From contig NW_025766991.1 in assembly GCF_003918875.1 (NCBI RefSeq), positions 2,914,001 to 2,978,000 of the forward strand: DNA of 64,000 nt. Direction: 5' to 3'. The DNA is from Haliotis rubra (Eukaryota). The position numbers and the translations under genes were made by a program. Under the pieces are notes generated by a model. That model did not search any database, was not told where the DNA came from, and saw only the letters and a list, made by a program, of their open reading frames with translations. This document shows, in pieces, positions 6,301 through 42,300 of the stretch. Numbering within the stretch: position 1 is the stretch's first letter; every line of letters starts with the position of its first letter.

Positions 6301-9300
6301 ACTGAGAGTCTAAGGCAAGAAAGCTGTTTCAAGCTAGTACAGCGTATGTTCATGGTACTAAGACATTAAACCTCTGTACTGAACAATACAAGGAGAGTTT
6401 TGTTTAACACCACACTCAGCAATATTCCAGCTGTATAGTGGCAGTCTGTAAATAATCAAGTCAGACCAGACAATCTAGTGATCAACATCATGAGCATCGA
6501 TCTATGCAGTTTGGATAAATATAAGAGGAGAAGTGAAAGATTCAGAATGAGTTGATAAAGTGGTTTTGGTTGTACAGTTAGTAATATAAGTACTGAAAGA
6601 CAAAGGGGGCCACTTGAGAAGTAGTACCCTTGAAAGGAAAAATCAGCAGTATCACACGATAAGCTTTTAACTCTCTAACTACTGAATGTTGTTTCACACA
6701 GCTATTCAACACCTTGAGCAGTAAATAACTTAGACCCAAACAAACATACATAGTGATTGCAAGCAAGACCACAAGGCAACATGACTAGTCACAGAGCTTG
6801 ACCATCTAATCTCACTCCTTATCCAACTTACGTAATTCTCCTGGGCCTTCTGACCCATGTAGAAGGCGATCATGGTGGAGATGGCGTTGATGCTGATGAG
6901 GAAGTTACACTCCTCCTCCCCAGTTTTGGCAAACTCCAGCAGGAAGGCGAAGTACTCGGTCAGGTACTTGCTGTGCGGCCGCACACCATGTTCAATCTAC
7001 AAGACAAATACACGGTAATGATCATTTACATGTAACCGTTCAGGTGAAAGGGCGAGAAATATAAACACCAAATAAGTAAGTATTGTTGAATAGTTTATAT
7101 AAAATGTCAAAGATATAGTCACACAAGCATATACAGGCCGGAGTCCTTGAGATACCCTATGTTGAGTTCATCCCTGTCACTGATTATTTTCACAGTAAAT
7201 TGTGTCAGCACATATTTAGAGAATTAATCAGACTCTCTTTGAGAACAGGTGTGACAGTTGCGTATTCAACTTTAAAAATAAAGGATCATATGCTTTATGC
7301 TATAGATGCTATACTTTAACATTCTTTTGGATGAATTACATACGAGTACTGCGTGTATTCTACATTATTGAGTACATTATTTAATAGGCTGGTTGGTTGT
7401 TTTGTTTAAGGCCGGATTAATCTACATAATTGGGATACGATGACATGTGTCAAGCAAGTAAGCGAGCCTGACCACCCGATCCCGTTAGTCGCCTCAAAGA
7501 CAAGCATGGGTTGCTGAAGACCAATTCTAACCCGAATCTTCACGGGTACATTATTTAATTGACTCCTGCATCTATGGAATATGGGATGATAGCATAATCA
7601 GACTTACGATGGTAAGCATCTTCTTGATGAACCTTGTCACACACGACCTGTTCCCGATCTCCGTCACGTCCACAACACCATCCTCACTGCAACACCAGCA
7701 ACACATGAACTCAGACATTAATTAAATCGGGTGGTGGAAATAATTCACATTAAAAAAAATGAAGTAAATGTTATATTAACATTTCAGGAAAGTCATAACA
7801 TCTTTACAAGAGCAAGACAGTTCTCACCTCTCCACAATAGGCTGCATGTAGAGATCAAAGTGGGAGTTGACGCAGCTGACCAATTACGTGAATCACCAAT
7901 CTCTGGAACATCTGAACAAATTCAACAAAATATTATTATAAGATAGATGTCCTAAATATGACAAATCTTTAAATAAAAACAGAAAAAACAACAACAAATC
8001 TCTGTGTGAAAACTTTATTTCAACTTCGTAAGTCAAGATTCTACTTTTTAATACAATGCGCTTACATAAATAAATACATATAGATATTGTGTACAGGTGT
8101 GAACGTACCTGTCTGACCATCTGATTGGGACACTTGATGAGTATCTGCTGGGGCCACCAGTCACTGTCAGCCATGTGGTCCAGGAACCACTGCAACATCA
8201 ACACCGCCCATGAAGCAAACACTTGGCCTAAGCATGGTCAGATACTCGGCATGAATGACTGAATAACATTGGTGATCTTGTACCCTACAGAGAGTGAAGG
8301 GAGTGTGTGAATGTTGTTTTATGTCAACTGTATGTGCCTAACTTTGTGACTATCCAGCTAGACTCACCTCACAAGGGCCGGGGCAGGAGTTAAACTGTTA
8401 GGTGAGCAGTTCAATCTCCACCTCTGTATAATGTGCCTAACTGTGTGACTATCCAGCTAGAATGTCAAGTGACACCAGACTCACCTCACAAGCGGCCGGG
8501 CAGGAGTTAAACTGTTAGGTGAGCAGTTCAATCTCCACCTCTGTATAATGTGCCTAACTGTGTGACTAGCCAGCTAGAATGTCAAGTGACACCAGACTCA
8601 CCCTCACTAAAGTGGGGCAGGAGTTAAACTGTTAGGTGAGCAGTTCAATCTCCACCTCTGTATAATGTGTGCCTAACTGTGAGCAGTTCAATCTCCACCT
8701 CTGACTATTCAGCTAGAATGTCAAGTGACACCAGACTCACCTCACAAGCGGCGGGGCAGGAGTTAAACTGTTAGGTGAGCAGTTCAATCTCCACCTCTGT
8801 ATAATGTGCCTAACTGTGTGACTAGCCAGCTAGAATGTCAAGTGACACCAGACTCACCTCACAAGCGGCCGGGCAGGAGTTAAACTGTTTGGTAAGCAGC
8901 TCAATCTCCACCTCTGTATAATGTGCCTAACTGTGTGACTATCCAGCTAGAATGTCAAGTGACACCAGACTCACCTCACAAGCAAGGACAAGGCGGGGCA
9001 GGAGTTGAACTGTTTGGTAAGCAGCTCAATCCACTGTAACATTGTGGGCTGAAACAAAGGCAGACATGTGTTTTCAAAAACAATCTGTTCTTGTTTATAT
9101 TGAAAGTGAGAAATAAATCAATACAAGTGTTTGCCACTGATATGGCAATGTCCCCCGCCTCTAAAGAATGGAATATCTATCTTTACTACTAGATATTCAC
9201 ATACAAGATGCCCGTAATGACTGGTGTCTGCATAATCACCCAATGTAGGCTGTCAACATAATTGAAAACATTGGGTGCAATATTTCATGAGATATCGCGT

Positions 9301-24300: not shown

Positions 24301-27300
24301 CATCAGTAGTTCCCACACATTCCGAGACAGACGGCGCGACTCCGCCAAAAGACCAGCCCTTTCAAGTGGATCCTGGGACACAAGCCAACCAAATGAATAA
24401 AACTAGAGGACTTTTAATGAAAAGTTTATCAGGTGACTGCTGACACATTTCATTAGAAGGAGTATAATACAAGATGAAAGCCTATTTGATCTTGTAATTG
24501 TCACACTTCAGCAAGGAAAAACATCATCCAGCAATTACACAAATAAAAAAGTGTCACTCAGTGTTGCAAAAACTTATATACACTTACATATACTTATTTA
24601 AAACTAGATCTAAAGGCCTGCCAGTGCATTCTTTACTGGTTTCAAAGTCAGATTAACTTCAGATGTAATCACAAAATTTAGTCAGGTCATATGACTGTCT
24701 AGTGTTGGTGCTTGTACTATGTGATTGTCTATCAGACAGCTACAGGAGTAGTGATATGAAATACAATGGCCAACTGACCATGTCGGACAACTCCACATCA
24801 AGGTCGCCAAGTCTCTGTAGGAGCATGAAGAGGTTGTCAAAGTGAGGCTCCTGCAGCAGAAGCATCATGGGAAGTCTGTCCCGGAGCGGTGATGGGAGGC
24901 TGGAGGAAGGCAGGGATCCGTCCATCTTCCGCGGCTGGCGGCTGGCACCAACAGACACGAACACAAGCTGTGGATGTGACAACAGGAATTAGATGTAACA
25001 TGCCAGAGAAAATATAGAAAGAGACAGACACTGTAAATAGAGTTATCCATGCTAGCTGTGCAGTATTGTAACACTCAAAATCCCCATACAGTGAGTTGGG
25101 ATTACACCACTTTTAGCAATTCCAGCAATATAACGAGTAAGAGAGAATGGTATTATGTGGCTTTTAGCAATATTCCAGCATTATCACAGTGGAGGACACC
25201 AGAAATGATCTTCACACATTGTACCCATGTGGGGATTCGAGCCTATACATTTTGTGTGGTACCTTTTAACCACTCAGATACCCCATCACCCCAATCTTCA
25301 GACATGAACTTAATGACATTTATTTGTACATTGAAAAAAAATATGGGCTAGGATTTGTTTTTGCCTCATCATACACAGGAGTGCATTTTTTCTTTCTTGT
25401 TTAAGCCATATCACAACCGTAACACAAAAATGGTATCAAAGTTTAGATTATGTGAAGCAAAGATGTGTTCCATTATCTCCACTTCAAAAATTCACTTACA
25501 AGCAGTCTTCTTTATCTACCAACTGCTCAGTGACTAGTATTTGTGTTCCCACATTCTTTAGCCAGTCTATCACTTCGCCTGCACTTAACATAATTATAGT
25601 AACAATGATAGTTACATAAGTTTAACACCACAATTTGGATACCAAATCATTCAATATGGGCTGTGTTCTTTCTGACATTTGTGATAGTGCTTACATAAAA
25701 ACACAATTTAAAACAAACAACTGTGCTCCCGCACCTGCATGTTCTTGAACTGCATTTCCCCGAGTGTCTTCTCATCCATGTCGACCGTCAGCTCCTGCCC
25801 CTGTGTGATCATCCGGATTGGTCCGTCCCCAAGCATGGCACCAAGGATCGGGGACAGCACACCGTGAGCCCTCTGCCTGCTGACGCTGTAGCTGTTGTTG
25901 TTTCTGTAACGCCTCCCACCACCGTGCCACCTCGGCTCGTAGCTCGGCAACAAGGTCAGTGGTCATCATCTCTAGCTGGTTCTGTGCACAGATACACACA
26001 TAGATGTCTTTCTGTATCAGATCTACATGATCATTAAACACAATTCACTGACCCTCTTGTCATCTCTTAAACAATCAGAATACTGTCTAAGGCCATATCT
26101 GGAATTACCTTTTATTATATTCAGAGATCATTAATCAGAAGATAGTGGGTGAGTTTAGTTTTACGCTGCACTCAGCAATATTCCACCTATATGGTGGCGG
26201 TTTGTAAATAATCAAGTCTGGACCAGACAATCCAGTGATCAACAGCATGAGCATCAATCTACGTAATTGGGAACCGATGACAAGTGTCAACCAAGTCGGC
26301 GAGCCTGACCATAATCAGAAGATACTTATTTAGTCAGTCATTTCAGGCTGTAACATTTAGTGTTTGGCATCCTATAAAATCACTTTTATAATTACAATTT
26401 AACACATTTACGTGTTTACTGTATATCTCCTGACATATTTAGGGGAACTTAAAACTCAAAATCTCAAGTAATATTCAAGCTTAGGGACAGGTAAGTAACT
26501 GAGACTGTAATACAGTGACATCCATCAGGGCAGTCAGTGAGCCAGACCAGGCCATGATCTTGTTGGTCACCTCATACAACAAGTATGGGATGCTGAAGAC
26601 CAATTCTAACACAGATCTTCAAGGGGTTCTCCAAGGTCAGATCTCCTTACCTTCTCTGTCATGCCAGCTGGCTGCAGCAGCACACATATGGAGGTGCAGT
26701 GCTTCTCCATCCGATGCTGCTGATGGCTGGTAATGCCCTTGCCGTCAATCTGCCAGTTGCGCAGGTGGTAGGCATAGCGACGCCGGAAGGCTTCCAAGTG
26801 GTTCTTCAGAAGAGTCAGGCCCTGTTGGATAATCTGGAAACTCCCACATGTGTCCTGCAAGGGTGAGAAAAGCATGAGAAAAATTTGAAAAAAAAGTGAG
26901 ACAAGGGCGAAGGAAAGGTGACACGAGAAAGAAGGGTAAGACAAAGTGAAACAACTGTGAAAAAAGAATAAGACAGTAAGCGAGGCGCAGTGAGACAAGA
27001 GAGACATATGAGTGAGATAGGAGAGACACAAAAGTGAGACAAGAATGAGACAAGAGAGGAAAGCTAAAACATTTACCGCTTGGGCAGGAATTAATGAGCA
27101 AAGGTGTTGACAATCAATCAAATTCAGGCATCTAATCCATGATCATAGTACTGTCAGACAACCATGTCATGAATGTAAGCAATACTGAAAAGTGAATACA
27201 GGCATACAGGCAACCTGACTGGATCATACACACTTAGGGATGGTTCATAATTTATGGCTTTTTTTTTTTTTTTTTTTGAGAGAGAGAGAGAGAGAGAAGA

Positions 27301-30300
27301 GAGAAAGAAAATAAAGGAAGGAAGGAGGGAAGAAAGAGGGGAGAGAGAGGGGAGGTCACCCATTTTGTTCTGGGGAGCTGGGGGTCAGCAATTTTGTACA
27401 CATGTACTTGGGGGTGGGGGTGTCAGCAATTTTGTTATTAAAAATTATGCTTAGAAATTATTGAAAGGTAACCCTTGTCCGATGGAAGCCCAAATATTAA
27501 TAAAGTCTGTTTGGGGTCCATCTGGACCCCAAACCGCTAAGGGTCCGCAAATTGTAGTTCATGGGGTTTCTGGCGCCACATTTTACATCGGGAATCATGG
27601 AGGCTGCACTGCGATCAGCGTTTACTTCTGAGAGGTAAATATAACAATTTCACTATGTAATAAATTCACTATGCAATATAAACTCGTGACGTGCTTTATA
27701 GCAAATATATGGTTGACAGATCAATGTCTATTTCTTTCTTTCATAGTCTCAATTGCCCTGTTGGACTGGAACACATCGTGTTCCACACAGGGAAAAAGCG
27801 GAAGGATGTGTATCGAGCATTGTATGGTGCGCTTGTGGTAAGTATGTTAAACCATAAATAATTTCAGTTTCATCATTGTCGTTTTCATGTAGTACTTTTC
27901 ATACACTGATTTGTAAGACAAGAAACTGCAAAAAAGTTATTCAGACACTGTAAACAGTTGGGTTTTTTATGTGTGCAGTATGGAGAGAAGCTGGCACCCC
28001 CGGGAACCACCTTGGTCTATCCGACTGCTGTGCGGGAGGCAGTGAGGGGTCGTTTCCCGGAGGAAACTTCAGGAAAATACGATGACCAATACCTTACCAA
28101 GGTAAGTATGTATACATTTGCGTCTGCGCATGTAATCCATTTCATAATGCTTTTCTAATATAAAGTTACGTCATGTATGATATTGACATTGTTCAATAAC
28201 TTAATTGATGTTTGATCTCTTTATTCGTACACGATATGTAGAACACTGATTCACACAAAAATAACTTTATTTCTCACCTTATAAAAAAAAGTAATACATC
28301 GGTACAATGTACTGTGTGAAGGAATAGGTACCAACAAATGAATGCTTATATGGGAATGATTCTATTTGCAGGGTCGCCATGTCACATTGGCAGAGATAGC
28401 ATCATTGAAATTGAGGGTCCCCCAAACCTGTGCCAAGTGTCGGGCAACAAGACCAGCCAAACCAGAAAGAACCAGATCTTCCACTGCCCCATACTGAGGA
28501 TACTTGTGCTGAAGAACACACTTTCTTACTACATACATTGTATTAAACTCAATTTCACAAAGAATGTGTTACTCAGTTACTAACTTTGCATTACGCAAAC
28601 TAAATTAGAACAGAAAAACATGAATGATTACCATGTATGACGTATCAGGACAGTTAAAAGTGTAACGAAATACAACATTGTTCAGTAGTGTCAACATTCA
28701 CTATTGACTCGAGCCCATGTCTGAAACGAAAAATTGTTACTTCCAGCACTGAGTTATTATTGAGCGCAGTCATGACACACAAACCGTCCATGTTGTGGAC
28801 ATGTTGGTTTCATGCACTTGGTGCAGCATGTTTTCACCTTCCTATCACTGCTTCTGGGACAAGAATGACAGCGTCTTTTCTTTGCCGGTGGACTTGCTTC
28901 ACTGCTTGTTGTACGTACTTCAGCTGTGTAACCAGCATTTGCAAAGTCACATCGAAGTTGCTCCCGGGTGTTTGATGCCATCCGTCTTTGAATGTTTGGT
29001 CCTGTTAGTGCCTCGCCCAGTTCCAAAAGGAAATGTCGGCGCCTTGTTCTCTGTTTGTTCTGCCACAGTGGATTCTTTCCCAGCCAGATGATATAGGCAG
29101 CAATGGCAGCTATGTCGACCATATTCATGAAATACACAACAGGCCATCTGTTGGTTTTTCTCTTGACACTATATCGGTGTGCAAGCTGGTCTAGGGAATC
29201 CACACCACCTTTTGTTTCATTGTAGAACAGAATCATTTCAGGCTTGTGATTCTTGTCGACAATGACATCAGGAGAGCTATGCATGGTTGAGAGCAAAATG
29301 ACAGCTTTGGACTTCTTTGGTACATACGACACCATAGTTGCAGTTTCCCGAAAGCCGAAAATGGATGATTCCACTTCTCGTGCACGTTTTGGTAGAAATT
29401 CAGCTGGAACAAATGTTCTGTTTGAACGCACCGTTCCAACAAGAGTAAGTTGATCCTTCTGAAGGTTCAGAGCCAGATTCAGAGAAGTGAAATAGTTGTC
29501 CATTGTAATATTTCTTCCAGAACGGGCATAAGGTCGTGCCAGATCCATGACGACCTTTTCTCCAAGACCAACTTGCACTCTACCAGCCTCCTTTCCAATA
29601 TAGGGGTACGCCTTCAGTGGGTAGAACGTTTTGGCATCAACGATCCAAAATATTTTGAGTCCATATTTGTCTGGCTTTGAGGGAATATATTGCTTGAAGC
29701 CGCATCTTCCCCTAAAGGGCACCAATTGTTCATCTACTGTGAGATACGCACCTGGAGAATAAAAGCGTTGAAGTCGGGCATTGAATGTATCAAACACTTT
29801 ACGAATCGGGGCCAGTTTATCACGTTCTTGTCTCTGGGATCGTTCGGCTTTGTCATCAAATCTGAGATACGTCATCAGGTGTTGAAACCGCTCCCTGGAC
29901 ATGGTTGACCGTACTTGTGATAATCCATATTTGGTGCTCCACAGCATCTCTGTACTCTGATTGTTGTTGTGGGTAACACCAGCGATAATCCATATCCCAA
30001 TCAGTGCTGTGACTTCAATACCATCTGTTTGCTTCCACTGTGTGCCAAGCTTAGTTTCAGCGAACTGATTTGTCCATTTGACAATATCGTCAACAATTTC
30101 AGGACAGACATACAAACTGAAGGCTTCCATTGGATTTTGAAAATCTCCATTGACATTGGTGACCTTTCCATTCAGCTGGCGAATAATATTTCTCTGAGGC
30201 GTTCGAGCTAATGACATTGGGTGCTTGAACCACTGTGTTCCATCACGGCTGCAATAACTGTCAGGAGCTTGTCTTCGCACATCAGTCTCATTGTCTGAGC

Positions 30301-33300
30301 TGGAAGTACTCTCAATCTCTAAGTCACAGTCAGAATCTGTGCTTTCAGATGCTTCAGATGGTTGATAATCTTCATCAGATCCATCATCACTTTCATCAGT
30401 GTCATCACCACCAAGTTCCTGTTGCATAAGTTCAAATAAGTTTTGATAGTCCATTTAGAACGTGCTCTAGGCCCACAAGTCAGAGAAGACTTGGAAGGGT
30501 TCAATGAATCTGATTGCCTTGAACAATTCTGAATGCTGGTCAAAGATTTGTCAGTGGGGTCTGCACGGGCCCCATCAGTCCCCAGTAGGGTTTGTGCAAT
30601 AACACATCTAATACTTTATGATGGAAATTGTTTCTGAATCTTAAACCTGATTTAAAGAAAGAAAAATGGTAAATTGAAGATTACCTAATGTCCCATTAAG
30701 ATATTTTACCACTGACTGATTCTATCACAATATTTATAGTCTTGGGGTCCGTATGGACCCCGCTCCATCGGACTAGGGTTAATTGAGTCTGACCACCCGA
30801 TTCCATTAGTCGCCTCTTACGAAAAGCATGGGTAGCTGAAGACCAATTCTAACCTGATCTTCACAGGTAACTAGTTTCAGATTTAGCACGCCCGTGGGGA
30901 TTCTAGAAAATAATATGGGTCCCCAAAACCTATCCTTGTCATAAGGTGACTACATGGATCAGGTTGATTGCATGTCTTTGTATCTCAATTTGGTGTTTTC
31001 AAAACATCCCAACTTTGGATGCACTATATCACTGGATTATCTGGTCCAGACATAAATAATTAGACAGCCATCTAACAGCTGGAACACTGTGGTGTGTTCA
31101 ACAACCAACCAACCAATGAGATAAGCTATCTAGAAGTTGAAGTTGTTGTTATCAATAAATAACGATAGAAACTCACTGAAACTGTCAGGAGAACCCATGG
31201 AGGAGAACACACAGGTCAGGAAGTCTAGCCTCACGCCCGTCTCATCCTTGTGGCTGTACCTGGGGGGAAAGGCAACGTTTCTTTACAACTAAAACAGAGT
31301 GCTCCTTCCCTTATGGCCCTCTCGGACATTGTCACCAATGTTTCAAATATTTAACAATACCTTAAGTAACACATAACTGCATCAATCCACCTGCAACAAA
31401 GAGCTTAATTCCTATCATAAAAGTACAGTCAAACAGCATTGTGTTGAAGTTAAAGGGCCTAAGTAAATACTTCAAGTTATCCCAAGTTTGACACAAACAT
31501 AAAATGATGACTAAATCATGAATATTTCAGGCATCCAAAAGTTGACATGTCATAATTTTGACACAGGGTGTTAGACTGCAATTGGGTGATCTATTTTGTA
31601 TATGTAATGCTAATACACAGCTCATAAAAAGCTCTATAGGTACTACAGTCATCCTTGCCATAACAAGGGTCTTGGGGTAAATGGATGACCTCCCACTCGC
31701 CCACCCACCCCATCCCCAGCATTATGACTGACTGACATTTACGCCGCTTTTAGCAATATTCCAGCAACATCACGGCGGGGACACCAGAAATGGGCTTCAC
31801 ACATAGTACCCATGTGGGGATTCGAACCCGGGTCTTCGGCGTGACGAGCCAACGCTTTAACCACTAGGCTACCCCACCGCCCCCCCAGCATTATGAGACA
31901 CAGGCATCATACATAACACAGAGTAAAGGCCAAGCATTGCCATTTTGCTAATTTACAACACAACAGCGGACGATAACATTAAGATGCATGATTGCTGGTG
32001 AACTTTTTTTTATGGGAGCAACAGATTACCTCACGGTTTAACCAAAAACGTGGTATCGCAGAGGGCGTTATTGTGAGGGATGACTGTATATGGGGAGTGA
32101 CTGAGCTTAGTTGTACGCTGCTTTTAGCAATATTCCCATAATATCACGACAGAGGACACCAGAAATGGGTTTCACACATTGTACCCATGTGGGGATTCGA
32201 ACCCTTTAACAACAAGGATACCCAACCATCCTGACTGTATATGGACCATAACAAAATACTTCATAGATCCCTTACCAAAGCAGGCTTTACCTACTCACAA
32301 TGACAGCAAGTAAAGTGGCAGTATATGCATGTTTGTTCCTCATAATATTCCCATGACAACTTACAGGGAGTTTGACCTGTTCCTCCTGTTCTCAGTGTAA
32401 TACACTAGATCCCGGAAGTAATGCTTCATCATGCCAAGATTGTTCTCTGACCACCTGTAAAATCAAAACAGTCACGGTACATATATCTAGTTGTGGTTTC
32501 ACATATTGTCTCTATACCATTGTTTGTTTGTTTTGTTCTTGTTTAACGCCACACTCAGCAATATTCCAGCTAAATGGCGGCAGTCAGTAAATAAAAATTG
32601 ATCCTGGACCAGACAACCCAGTGATTAACATCATGAGCATCAATCTATGCAATTGGGATACGACATGTGTCAACTATGTCAGCAAGCCTGACCAGCCATT
32701 CCCGTCAGTTGCCTCTTACGACCAATTCTAACACAGATCTTCATGGGTCCCTTCCATACCAAGCAATGTAACAGTTCGTAAGGTTAAGATCTGAGATCTC
32801 TCTATTATTCTTTTCATTTCAAGTGATGCATCCAAGATTATACTGTGTCATACATGCACTGGGGGGTGGTGGGGGTAGTTTTGGACTTTCTTGTTTCATT
32901 GTATCAGCCGATTCAGACACCACGCCCTGGGGTGGAAATAACTTTAAAATTGCTAATGTACACCGGTACAGTGACACATGTAAAATCACTTGCCCTGATA
33001 ATTTTCCACTGTACCGCCGGTTCTTATTCATTTTCAAATAAACAACAGCTTAACATTGAAAGTCAACTGACACTGGTACAGTTTGATATACAAATTTTTT
33101 TGCCCGATTCCAGAAAAACACTGGACTTGGACGCCGGGCAATGGGCTTCACACATTGTGCCATGTTCACAGGATTCAACTTCGGTTTTTCGCTGACGAGC
33201 CTATAACTGTTGGAAGTCCACGCTACAGTATAGGAAGTAAGACAGTCATAGCGCTACGACAGCTTTATGAAACGGGGCCCTGTCGTTGTTTTATCTCCTC

Positions 33301-39300: not shown

Positions 39301-42300
39301 CTCATCAAACAGGGGCAGTCTGTGACATCTTAGTTAAGGTGATGCTGCCGACACCTCGCCATAAAATATAGAAATACGATGTTATTAAAGTTTAAACTTA
39401 AAATTAACTTGTAAATACCATTTTATTATGAAACAAGGAATTGGAATTCAGTGTAACCATAGTTATGGTGTCTCTTTTCACTTTCACACGAGAAAATTCA
39501 GATCGGCTGAAAAGTAGGTCATTGTCTGAATAGGTTAATGAGACTCATGTTTCGGTTTGTTAAAATCTATGCATACTTATTTTCCCTTTATAAGTTTCTC
39601 GGAAATTCTTGCGTCAGGAATTGTGTCAAACATAGCGCTCACATTTTATTAACATTCACAAAGTCTGTGTATGAACTTAATTATCTCATTTCCGATTGAA
39701 CATTGAAAAACGCTGGCAGAATTTGACGAAAAGTGGTTTTGTCTTGATCTTAAGGTGTCTTATAGTTGGTGTTAGAATTCAAGATTTTAGTATCGTGATA
39801 CATATCATATCGCCACCCTTGTATCGGGATTCGTATCGTATCGCAGCTTCAGTGCACAATACTTTGACAATATATCATCGTGACTAAAATTTTAGTATCG
39901 GGATGTATCGTATCGCAGTTTGTATGCCAATACCAGCACTAATATCTATTTTTGCTTCAATGGGATAAACATTTGAAATTGAAGATACTTTCAATAGTAT
40001 GTACTGCCATAAACTATCAAACATTAATTAGACATTCCAGTAAACTATTGTGAAGTCTTAAAATTTTGAATCAATATCACTTAAAGAGTCATCTGCTTAT
40101 GGGAGTTGCCAGTTTGAAAGAACAGCTGTAAAGCTCGAGAAAGCTGCTTTCTGACTGGCTAATGTTGACTTCTTGTTAGTCACATTATTAGTCGGTCAAA
40201 GGTTACACGAAGGTCATTCTGATGTGATGCTTAATGTGATTTCCATGGATCATTGTTTAGCAGTAGCTAGAACTAAGATCTGATATCAATGAGACTGACA
40301 TGACCCTGAGGTTGAGGTGTTGGGATCGAGCCCACCTGTGACCGGGTGTAAAAGATCAATAATCAGTGTTGAGGTCAGTAATTGATCAACAATCAATATA
40401 ATCATAAACCCCAGCACACAACTCAAGTTGGCAGTAACAGGACACAATCATAACACTGTGCAAAGGAAACAGGCAATTAATACAACTACAAGACAATCTT
40501 GGATAGTTCCTGTTGAGACATGCACACAAGGATGTTGTTTATGGATGTTGTAACAGCTAATATAACAAAATTCTGAAATTTTTTTAAAAATAGCTGACAA
40601 AGGCACATCAATGGGTAATGATTAACATGTGTGTGAAGTTGGTGAATCTAATCATAACACTTTAAGAGTTATGCTCCAAGACAAAGTTTGTTGAGACATG
40701 GACAAGGATCGTTGAATGCAGTTTTACAAGTCAGGAAACTGCATCAGTTGATTATATCTTTATCTAATAAACATAACAATATATGAGGTGAGGTGAAATT
40801 GGGTTTAACGTCGTGCTTGAGAATATTTCGCTCATATGACAACATGCATGAGTGTGTATGTATGTGCGCTGCTTGTACTAGCCCAGACTTAAGCTGGTTT
40901 TATAGTGCTAGCCCACTGAGATACCATGCCGCAGTGAAGCATGAATACCCCACTCAGACACATTATACTGACTCCGAGCAGACCAGTCCTTGTTGTACCC
41001 ATTAATGCCGAGCGCCAGTCAGGGACCAACAAGTACCATATTTTAACGTCTTTTGGTATGACGCGGTCGGGGATCAAACCTGCAACCTTCCGCTCTCGGG
41101 CGGACGCTCTAACCACTACACCACGGAGGCGGTCAAACATAACAATAAGAAACATACTTCCTAAAGTTTAATTTCATCTTTTATGAATATTGATTACTCT
41201 CCCATCGATAAATGCTGAACCAAGCGAGATAGATCAATCACTCCAGCACTACCTCAGACTATGGTTTAGCAGTAACATGAAGTAAGATCGGATTTAAATG
41301 AGATTGAACTTGAGCATAAATATCTGTTCACTGATGAACTTACCCCTGTAATGCCCTCTGTCTCTGTGCAGCTCTCATCTTCTGTATGATGGAGGTACAG
41401 TCACATATCTGTACACTGATGAACTTACCCCTGTAATGCCCTCTGTCTCTGTGCAGCTCTCATCTTCTGTATGATGGAGGTACAGTCAAACACGTCTGTG
41501 TCCTGACCCTTCCCAGACATCGCAGGCTGCTGATGTGAATCAGCTGCACCAGACGACACCCCTTCCTGAAAAAAACAGTAACTACAGTGGAGACAGATTT
41601 CTTGGTCTATGTGTTGCCAAAGTCAAAACATATCTGTGATAAACAGTGAATATCATATAGACCAGACTTCAGAGATTAATTGTATGTGACTAATTTTGAT
41701 TCAATAATAAATGTAATTATCCTTTGTTAAATCAATGAATGTACACATAAACCCATTCATCAATCAGTCACAAATCAATATTTTCAGTGAAGAATAAGCT
41801 CCAAAAATTGCAAAGCGAAAACATTGACAAACAATTCTTATAAATGCAGCCAAAAAGGAAAAGAAAACCATGTAGATATTAAGCAGTGGCAGGTTCAATA
41901 AACTGATTTATCCAGTAATGACTTTTGAAATAGCAACAAATTCCAATCATTCAGTGTGGTTACCTGTGCTGCAATTTCTGCCAATTTGACCTTGTCTGGA
42001 CCATCTCCGCTGGCATTATGCTCCTTTCCAGCATCTTCATGAGCCTCATGCATGACATCTTGCATGACTTCGCTGACCTTCTGGATGTTGACGTGGTCAT
42101 GGTGACACAGCTTCCCCTGTCGCCGCAACATCATGTGTGCCGCCTGCTGCAACAACTGGTGTTGGCGCTGTTCAACAAGCTGCTTCTTCTGTTTCTGAAT
42201 TTCCTGTTGAGCCTGAAACAGTTTCATCTTACGGAACACTTTGGTCTCCTCCTCAATATCATCGAAGTCCGAGCTATCCTCACTCTCACGAGGACAAAGC

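What the first reader, a model, noticed from the sequence alone, without database searches (positions are those of the whole stretch)
26855..31176. About 150 aa of conserved USP34 are missing exactly at the piggyBac, and its flanks do not rejoin
Seen: exon 21 ends ...GSPDSF in phase 1 and the next findable exon starts DTCGSF in phase 0. Direct splicing would shift the frame and stop at 26745-26747. Human USP34 (recalled) has about 150 aa here (RLSLEQVDILW...KCMESL), and I find no exon for them. The left flank is GTAA rather than TTAA and lies in a one-ended MITE-like sequence (from ~27234, ttagggatggttcataatttat), while the right flank is half of a family C SINE. Inference: several exons were lost by a transposon-adjacent deletion or recombination between two piggyBac copies, or the assembler collapsed two copies.
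Basis: partly seen in the sequence, partly recalled or inferred. Interest (0 to 1): 0.72.

Follow-up and report, generated by a model that had tools for sequence, protein, structure and literature searches.

The report
Three USP34 exons replaced by piggyBac
In the blacklip abalone reference genome, three conserved coding exons of the deubiquitinase gene USP34 are missing and an intact piggyBac transposon sits in their place, which breaks the gene into two in the public annotation. It is most likely one damaged gene copy, or else a local assembly fault, and not a new form of the protein.

Summary
The window is Haliotis rubra contig sequence, and USP34 runs on the minus strand. Exon 21 ends at 31177 in phase 1 and the next exon starts at 26854 in phase 0.

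Three other Haliotis species have three exons between these two (155+117+186 nt, 153 aa). These exons are absent from the window and from the whole 1.38 Gb assembly, and positive controls worked. RefSeq splits the gene into two models at exactly this point.

Compared with H. asinina, about 1.63 kb is replaced by a 3,307-bp piggyBac with an intact transposase. Its right end (TTAA) abuts the interior of an orthologous SINE. Its left end (TAA) abuts the interior of a MITE. Neither repeat has TTAA at the break, whereas another copy of this piggyBac has a normal TTAA on both sides.

This favours one transposon-linked deletion carried on one haplotype, a null allele (about 0.5). It argues against recombination or assembler collapse between two ordinary insertions (about 0.3 and below). 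The available public data were short-read contigs that break in the repeats, so real allele and assembly fault could not be separated.

The scan has noted similar transposon-linked gaps in two other conserved genes of this assembly.

The parts
31177..31259 (-). USP34 exon '21' (83 nt). Encodes ..YSHKDETGVRLDFLTCVFSSMGSPDSF and ends with one extra base A (phase 1).
   Evidence: 100% identical to H. rufescens residues 1063-1089.
30883..31176 (-). First ~295 nt of the intron after exon 21, orthologous to the H. asinina intron (L039 39211-39514).
   Evidence: blastn and MAFFT against L039.
30785..30868 (.). Terminal ~85 bp of a very high-copy SINE. The same SINE sits at this position, full length, in H. 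asinina. Here the other ~140 bp are gone.
30779..30782 (.). TTAA next to the right piggyBac end. It is followed by one or two unmatched T before SINE homology starts. It is not part of the SINE consensus or of the H. asinina orthologue.
27472..30778 (-). piggyBac element, 3,307 bp, with terminal inverted repeats CCCTTGTCCGATGG / CCCTAGTCCGATGG. It is absent from the whole USP34 locus of three other Haliotis species.
28760..30454 (-). Uninterrupted piggyBac transposase ORF, 565 aa, on the same strand as USP34. A TAA stop lies directly upstream of its ATG.
   Evidence: Pfam PF13843 DDE_Tnp_1_7, E 2.6e-78, covering the full profile.
27590..28500 (+). Spliced passenger gene inside the piggyBac, on the opposite strand (the subject of other findings). 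Not part of the USP34 lesion.
   Evidence: Splice-like GT/AG boundaries. One contig of run X12 skips 28100-28369 (table 8, record 11).
27469..27471 (.). TAA next to the left piggyBac end, read as a remnant of a TTAA. The preceding G (27468) belongs to the MITE.
27234..27468 (+). First ~235 bp of a ~400-bp MITE (terminal repeat TTAGGGA..GTTCATAATTTATGGC) with an internal poly-T/(GA)n expansion. The remaining ~170 bp and the second terminal repeat are missing. The MITE is absent at this site in H. asinina.
26855..27233 (-). Last ~380 nt of the intron before exon 22, orthologous to H. asinina L039 41216-41680.
26651..26854 (-). USP34 exon '22' (204 nt, phase 0 to 0), DTCGSFQIIQQGL...PAGMTEK.
   Evidence: Single copy in the assembly.

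Best explanation
The window is part of the Haliotis rubra reference assembly. On this contig a stretch of the USP34 gene has been replaced by an intact 3.3-kb piggyBac. The replaced stretch is about 1.6 kb in H. asinina units plus the far half of a MITE, and it held three coding exons (458 nt, 153 aa of the ARM-repeat region).

I read the contig as a true copy of one haplotype of the sequenced animal. The lesion is a transposon-linked deletion that makes a null allele:
- Splicing exon 21 to exon 22 shifts the frame and stops after 36 codons.
- The catalytic USP domain lies far downstream of the break.

The intact allele was probably on a contig removed by haplotig purging.

Inferred mechanism. 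The element carries its own TTAA (right) and TAA (left), and these are joined to sequences that have no TTAA. This is what is expected if transposase cut the element free with its flanking TTAA attached, the chromosome ends were resected, and the element was rejoined by end joining. Deletions that started at both cut sites would give the same picture.

Shown: the missing exons, the junction anatomy, and absence from the assembly. Inferred: that the structure exists in the animal, that it is heterozygous, and the repair route.
For: Source genome. RefSeq H. rubra proteins XP_046575729.1 and XP_046575727.1 match the window at 100% across the break. One ends by reading through the exon-21 donor. 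The other starts at an intronic ATG 21 nt before exon 22. G000 has 1,378,282,171 bases in 2,855 contigs. The published assembly has 1,378,265,264 bp in 2,854 scaffolds (PMC6774278).

Missing exons. Three relatives carry exons of 155+117+186 nt here, with nearly invariant protein. USP34 proteins from many animal phyla, including a dozen molluscs, cover the segment. No match exists in the 1.38 Gb assembly by protein or by exon DNA. Controls found 28-33 aa exons with a sea-urchin query and found exon 22 with H. rufescens DNA.

Breakpoints. They lie inside an orthologous SINE and inside a MITE. Neither has TTAA at the break.

The element. Another copy of the same piggyBac (C2149) has TTAA on both sides. 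piggyBac is absent from the USP34 locus of the three relatives. An excised piggyBac carries the flanking TTAA on each end (PMC7351741).

Assembly history. The pipeline purged about 530 Mb of haplotigs from an animal with 1.3-1.4% heterozygosity. The contig of run X1 over exon 22 differs from the window at two third-codon positions, so a second haplotype exists.
Against: No read or contig was seen that spans either junction. All public runs offered were short-read contigs that break in the MITE and the SINE.

The assembly came from about 30x Nanopore reads with an early wtdbg, DBG2OLC and QuickMerge. These can drop sequence between nearby repeats.

In run X1, contigs identical to the window's piggyBac over 29087-30038 have about four times the word depth of the unique flanks, while the assembly holds one copy of that exact type. 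So copies of this element are missing from the assembly. The tool warns that contig depth is not a copy number.

Over 27548-28404 the window's piggyBac letters were not seen in X1 contigs at all.

A loss-of-function allele of a strongly conserved gene is a priori rare.

The scan's notes report similar gaps in two other conserved genes of this assembly. That fits assembly faults as well as it fits genetic load.
Confidence: 0.5

Rival explanations
1. Assembly artefact. The animal has exons A-C. The assembler (wtdbg/DBG2OLC) or QuickMerge collapsed two nearby same-orientation piggyBac copies, or spliced two contigs inside the element, and dropped what lay between.
For: The pipeline was a draft long-read one with merging and purging. 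In run X1 the window-type piggyBac has about 4x the flank depth, against one such copy in the assembly. Part of the window's piggyBac (27548-28404) has no identical contig in X1. Other conserved genes in this assembly show similar gaps (unchecked notes). The exons are nowhere in the assembly.
Against: Collapse of two ordinary insertions predicts canonical TTAA sites in the MITE and the SINE at the retained flanks. Neither is there. Two insertions of a low-copy element in the same orientation within about 2.5 kb are themselves unlikely. An assembler cannot invent junctions that fall exactly at both element ends, so both odd junctions must exist in real DNA anyway.
Confidence: 0.3
2. A real deletion made by ectopic recombination between two piggyBac copies, one in the SINE and one in the MITE, leaving one chimeric copy.
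For: It would explain why the flanks do not rejoin and why a full-length element remains.
Against: It has the same junction problem as the collapse model: no TTAA in either host repeat at the break. The left flank reads GTAA. No relative has any piggyBac in this gene.
Confidence: 0.08
3. The state is fixed or functional in H. rubra. USP34 works without the 153 aa, or as two separate genes, or as a USP34-transposase fusion in the manner of CSB-PGBD3.
For: The transposase ORF is intact and on the same strand as USP34. RefSeq annotates two genes.
Against: Direct splicing shifts the frame. The segment is nearly invariant in Haliotis and is present across the animal USP34 proteins recovered. A stop lies directly before the transposase ATG, and no in-phase AG with a pyrimidine tract exists in its first ~110 codons. 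The two RefSeq models end and begin in intron read-through.
Confidence: 0.03
4. The exons are present in the interval but were overlooked.
For: None.
Against: Searches with a query whose neighbouring exons match at 96-100% found nothing in the window or the assembly. All non-piggyBac sequence in the intron is accounted for as orthologous intron, SINE or MITE.
Confidence: 0.01

Closest known systems
Canonical piggyBac cut-and-paste insertion (TTAA target duplication, seamless excision; Chen et al. 2020, PMC7351741)
   Same: DDE_Tnp_1_7 transposase, CCC...GGG inverted ends, and TTAA at the right end. A sister copy in this genome has TTAA on both sides.
   Different: Here the two flanks are not halves of one target site. 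The left tetranucleotide is GTAA, neither host repeat has TTAA at the break, and about 1.6-1.8 kb of target DNA is missing.
Flanking deletions made by aberrant transposition or break repair at cut-and-paste elements (P element, Ac/Ds; recalled from general knowledge, not checked here)
   Same: A deletion that begins exactly at a transposon end while the element stays in place.
   Different: Both ends are affected here, and the new junctions are not at the element's preferred target sequence. This points to end joining rather than transposase-made strand transfer. I found no described piggyBac case.
Local faults in purged long-read draft assemblies (repeat collapse, or retention of the damaged haplotype; Gan et al. 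2019, PMC6774278)
   Same: Conserved exons absent from the final haploid assembly, and the gene split in the annotation.
   Different: The junction anatomy is not what a simple collapse of two normal insertions would leave.
CSB-PGBD3, a host gene spliced onto an intronic piggyBac transposase (recalled from general knowledge)
   Same: An intact transposase ORF in an intron, on the same strand as the host gene.
   Different: There is an in-frame stop directly upstream of the ATG, no suitable in-phase acceptor, no RNA evidence, and downstream host exons are deleted.

Membership tests
piggyBac superfamily transposon | Transposase with the DDE_Tnp_1_7 (PF13843) catalytic core | tested here: met
   E 2.6e-78, profile positions 1-349 of 349, uninterrupted 565-aa ORF.
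piggyBac superfamily transposon | Short terminal inverted repeats beginning CCC and ending GGG | tested here: met
   CCCTTGTCCGATGG at 27472 and CCATCGGACTAGGG ending at 30778. Shared with the C2149 copy.
piggyBac superfamily transposon | TTAA target-site duplication on both sides, with flanks that rejoin into one site | tested here: not met
   Right flank TTAA, left flank GTAA. The flanks are the interiors of two unrelated repeats. The family itself meets this feature: copy C2149 has TTAA/TTAA.
piggyBac superfamily transposon | C-terminal cysteine-rich domain | tested here: inconclusive
   A Cys/His-rich tail is visible in the translation, but no profile was matched to it.
USP34 orthologue | Collinear match to USP34 of close relatives, including the USP catalytic region | tested here: met
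   About 60 collinear exon matches to H. rufescens USP34, most at 93-100%, including residues 1890-2270. Relatives carry PF00443, PF13423 and PF12030.
USP34 orthologue | Complete, uninterrupted coding sequence | tested here: not met
   Residues 1090-1242 have no exon, and the neighbouring exons are out of phase.
Recombination or assembler collapse between two canonical piggyBac insertions | Each retained flank is a normal TTAA insertion site within its host sequence | tested here: not met
   The MITE consensus at the break reads GGGAAGG|GGAGG. The SINE consensus reads AAGTCAGC|GAGTC, and the H. asinina orthologue reads GTCAGTGAG.
Recombination or assembler collapse between two canonical piggyBac insertions | Reads showing two copies around the exons | not testable with these tools
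   Only short-read contigs were available, and they break in the repeats.
Host-transposase fusion gene (CSB-PGBD3 type) | In-frame splice acceptor joining host exons to the transposase ORF | tested here: not met
   A TAA stop lies directly upstream of the ATG. No in-phase AG with a pyrimidine-rich tract in the first ~110 codons (a crude scan).

The most novel reading that the evidence does not exclude
The contig records a real, heterozygous null allele of an essential gene, made in one step. An active piggyBac was cut out with its TTAA ends, the broken chromosome was chewed back through three exons, and the element was ligated back by end joining. That would be a natural example of a repair outcome not described for piggyBac. 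It would also be a direct look at how a young transposon adds recessive lethal load in a wild broadcast-spawning mollusc.
Probability: 0.3. Interest if true: 0.45.

Novelty: new member of a known kind. Interest (0 to 1): 0.3.

Why it matters
Practical. The public H. rubra reference and its RefSeq annotation carry a broken USP34: two partial gene models, with 153 conserved residues absent. Anyone using this gene, or counting gene loss or split genes in abalone, should know this.

Biological. If the allele is real, it shows a currently intact, multi-copy piggyBac causing a multi-exon deletion with non-canonical junctions. This bears on how 'seamless' piggyBac can still damage genes, and on the source of genetic load in highly heterozygous marine molluscs.

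If it is an artefact, it adds a third case to the two the scan has already noted in this assembly (TUSC3, XDH/AOX). That argues for caution with this assembly.

Tried and rejected
- Finding the exons inside the interval. Stop-free frames on both strands and tblastn with sea-urchin, crinoid, Nucella and Haliotis USP34 found nothing.
- Finding the exons elsewhere in the assembly. Protein searches and exon DNA searches found nothing. Two longer DNA queries that included introns were swamped by interspersed repeats and are uninformative.
- Reads. Laid on 26600-32500 they were dominated by the MITE, the SINE and other repeats. No listed contig bridges either junction, and the joint and loose-end tables were filled by unrelated repeats.
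- A 14.5-kb contig of run X12 (another species, possibly RNA) covers exon 22, but its neighbouring pieces were not listed. It gives no test for H. rubra.
- Haliotis transcript fragments. A search of the protein collection for fragments covering exons 21-A-B-C-22 found nothing above 67% identity.
- A USP34-transposase fusion reading. No in-phase acceptor was found.
- H. rufescens isoform X4 was not on record as a gene product. The longest isoform was used instead.
- A joined spliced USP34 model was not built or searched.
Full report
**What is in the sequence.** USP34 lies on the minus strand of the window.
- Exon 21 (31259..31177) encodes ..SSMGSPDSF and ends with one extra base, A. A GTGAGT donor follows.
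- The next recognisable exon (26854..26651) begins DTCGSFQIIQQGL directly after a TTGCAG acceptor. It is 204 nt long and runs from phase 0 to phase 0.
- Joining the two exons shifts the frame and reaches a stop at 26747-26745.
- The intron between them (26855-31176) holds a 3,307-bp piggyBac (27472-30778). Its 565-aa transposase ORF (30454..28760, same strand as USP34) is uninterrupted and matches PF13843 end to end at E 2.6e-78.
- The tetranucleotide to the left of the element is GTAA and to the right is TTAA.

The only adjustment is that 153 residues are missing, not about 150.

**Which genome and gene.** A profile-free search with exon 22 found USP34 proteins across animals. The closest is Haliotis rufescens USP34, and most of its exons match the window at 93-100%.

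In the 90% cluster of that protein, Haliotis rubra is represented by two partial RefSeq proteins. Both match the window at 100% across the break:
- XP_046575729.1 (734 aa) ends ..GSPDSFSEFLSLFIDNNNFNF. This is exon 21 read through its donor into the intron.
- XP_046575727.1 (2,305 aa) starts MLFSPLQDTCGSF. This is an intronic ATG seven codons before exon 22.

The assembly size also fits. G000 has 1,378,282,171 bases in 2,855 contigs. The published H. rubra assembly has 1,378,265,264 bp in 2,854 scaffolds (PMC6774278). So the window is the H. rubra reference, and the public annotation is broken at exactly this place.

**What is missing.** I fetched the orthologous loci of H. asinina (L039), H. 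rufescens (L040) and H. cracherodii (L041). In all three, exons 21 and 22 are separated by three exons of 155, 117 and 186 nt.
- Together with the carried-over A, these encode 153 residues (RLNQTQVDELW...ENVKK) and restore phase 0.
- The peptide differs at only three positions between H. asinina and H. rufescens.
- The segment is covered in USP34 proteins from many phyla, among them about a dozen molluscs.
- It overlaps the end of the ARM-repeat domain PF25010.

**Absent from the whole assembly.** I searched the 1.38 Gb assembly with this segment.
- Protein queries from a sea urchin, from Nucella and from H. rufescens gave nothing below E = 0.3.
- H. rufescens exon A and exon C DNA gave no hit.
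- Positive controls worked. A sea-urchin query found the 33- and 28-aa neighbouring exons. H. rufescens exon 22 DNA found the window once, at 93%.

**Breakpoints.** Against H. asinina, intron homology runs from exon 21 to window 30883. It then continues into a SINE that sits at the same position in both species.
- Right side: H. asinina has the whole SINE. The window keeps only its last ~85 bp (30785-30868), then one or two unmatched T, TTAA, and the piggyBac.
- Left side: homology to the H. asinina intron resumes at 27233, 160 nt downstream of H. asinina exon C. Between 27234 and 27468 lies the first ~235 bp of a MITE. Full copies of this MITE are about 400 bp and end in the inverted terminal repeat. 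The window copy stops mid-element, followed by TAA and the piggyBac.

Relative to H. asinina, about 1.63 kb (L039 ~39585-41215) is gone, plus the far ~170 bp of the MITE.

At neither break does the host repeat have TTAA:
- The MITE consensus reads ..GGGAAGG|GGAGG...
- The SINE consensus reads ..AAGTCAGC|GAGTC.., and the H. asinina orthologue reads GTCAGTGAG.

**The element.**
- The closest other copy in the assembly (C2149, 97%) has TTAA on both sides. So the family behaves normally and the window copy is the exception.
- No piggyBac sequence occurs anywhere in the USP34 loci of the three relatives.

**Reads.** Laid on 26600-32500, they break in the MITE and the SINE, so no listed contig bridges a junction. 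Three side observations follow.
- The contig of the best holder (X1) over exon 22 differs from the window at two third-codon positions, so a second haplotype exists.
- X1 contigs identical to the window's piggyBac over 29087-30038 have about four times the word depth of the unique flanks. The two other assembled copies differ there by 8-10 mismatches. This hints that copies of this exact element are missing from the assembly. The tool warns that contig depth is not a copy number.
- Over 27548-28404 X1 shows only a variant with a 12-nt insertion.

None of this decides between a real allele and an artefact.

**Interpretation.** Both junctions fall exactly at the element's ends, so they must exist in real DNA. 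An assembler does not invent them.

If two ordinary insertions had recombined or been collapsed, each retained flank would be a TTAA site of its host repeat. Neither is. That model also needs two same-orientation insertions of a low-copy element within about 2.5 kb.

A single event explains the anatomy more simply. An excised piggyBac carries the flanking TTAA on each end as a hairpin and then as an overhang (PMC7351741). If the donor break was resected and the element was joined back by end joining, TTAA or TAA would sit next to arbitrary sequence, as observed.

The assembly pipeline removed about 530 Mb of haplotigs from an animal with 1.3-1.4% heterozygosity. That would explain why the intact allele is nowhere in the assembly.

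My estimates:
- Real haplotype-specific deletion: about 0.5.
- Assembly fault: about 0.3.
- Real two-copy recombination: about 0.08.
- Any functional or fixed reading: about 0.03.

The scan's earlier notes report similar transposon-linked gaps in TUSC3 and in an XDH/AOX pair of this assembly (unchecked). This fits either genetic load or assembly faults.

**Consequence if real.** The allele would encode at most the first ~1,089 residues plus a short out-of-frame or intronic tail. It would lack the catalytic USP domain, whose exons lie at about 16,700-12,000 in the window. It would be a null allele.

**Comparison and novelty.** The parts are known kinds: a piggyBac, a SINE, a MITE, and a transposon-linked deletion or draft-assembly fault. 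The unusual points are the double non-canonical junction and the clean replacement of three exons. A literature search found no described piggyBac case of this type, but this was one search of open-access text. I rate it a new member of a known kind and of modest interest until read-level evidence is in.

Exons were handled one by one by reference.

Noticed in passing
window 27590-28500 (+), inside the piggyBac: A spliced passenger gene lies on the strand opposite the transposase. One 581-nt contig of run X12 (possibly RNA, another Haliotis species) lies on 27979-28099 and 28370-28519 and skips 28100-28369. This fits removal of the predicted last intron. The contig then continues to 28826, antisense to the transposase 3' end.
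   Followed up: partly
window 26714 and 26723 (exon 22): Contigs of runs X1 and X12 both read G where the window reads A, and both sites are third codon positions. The assembled haplotype therefore differs from the other sampled sequences inside this exon.
   Followed up: no
window 29087-30038 versus flanks 26600-27248 and 30839-31672: In run X1, contigs identical to the window's piggyBac have about 4x the word depth of the unique flanks. The assembly has only one copy of that exact type (C2149 and C173 differ by 8-10 mismatches per ~500 nt). The element may be more numerous, or more polymorphic, than the assembly shows.
   Followed up: partly
window 26858-27059; L041 27700-31200: The intron just upstream of exon 22 contains a short tandem-repeat-like CT-rich motif. 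In H. cracherodii it is expanded to about 3.5 kb of tandem copies, which makes that intron about 4 kb long.
   Followed up: no
window 8485-8532, 8741-8788, 8858-8905 (-): Three nearby copies of a 16-codon stretch each match H. rufescens USP34 residues 2426-2441 (94-100%). This may be a tandemly repeated micro-exon or an intronic duplication. H. rufescens has nine isoforms that differ by a few residues.
   Followed up: no
window 31722-31918 and 32116-32312: Two stretches in the intron upstream of exon 21 have word depths in the millions in every run laid. They belong to extremely abundant repeats that produced most of the joints and loose ends in the read tables.
   Followed up: no
L039 39529-39720 versus window 30785-30868: The SINE after exon 21 is shared at the same position by H. 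rubra and H. asinina. The alignment does not show it in H. rufescens or H. cracherodii. It is a possible shared-insertion marker grouping the first two species.
   Followed up: no
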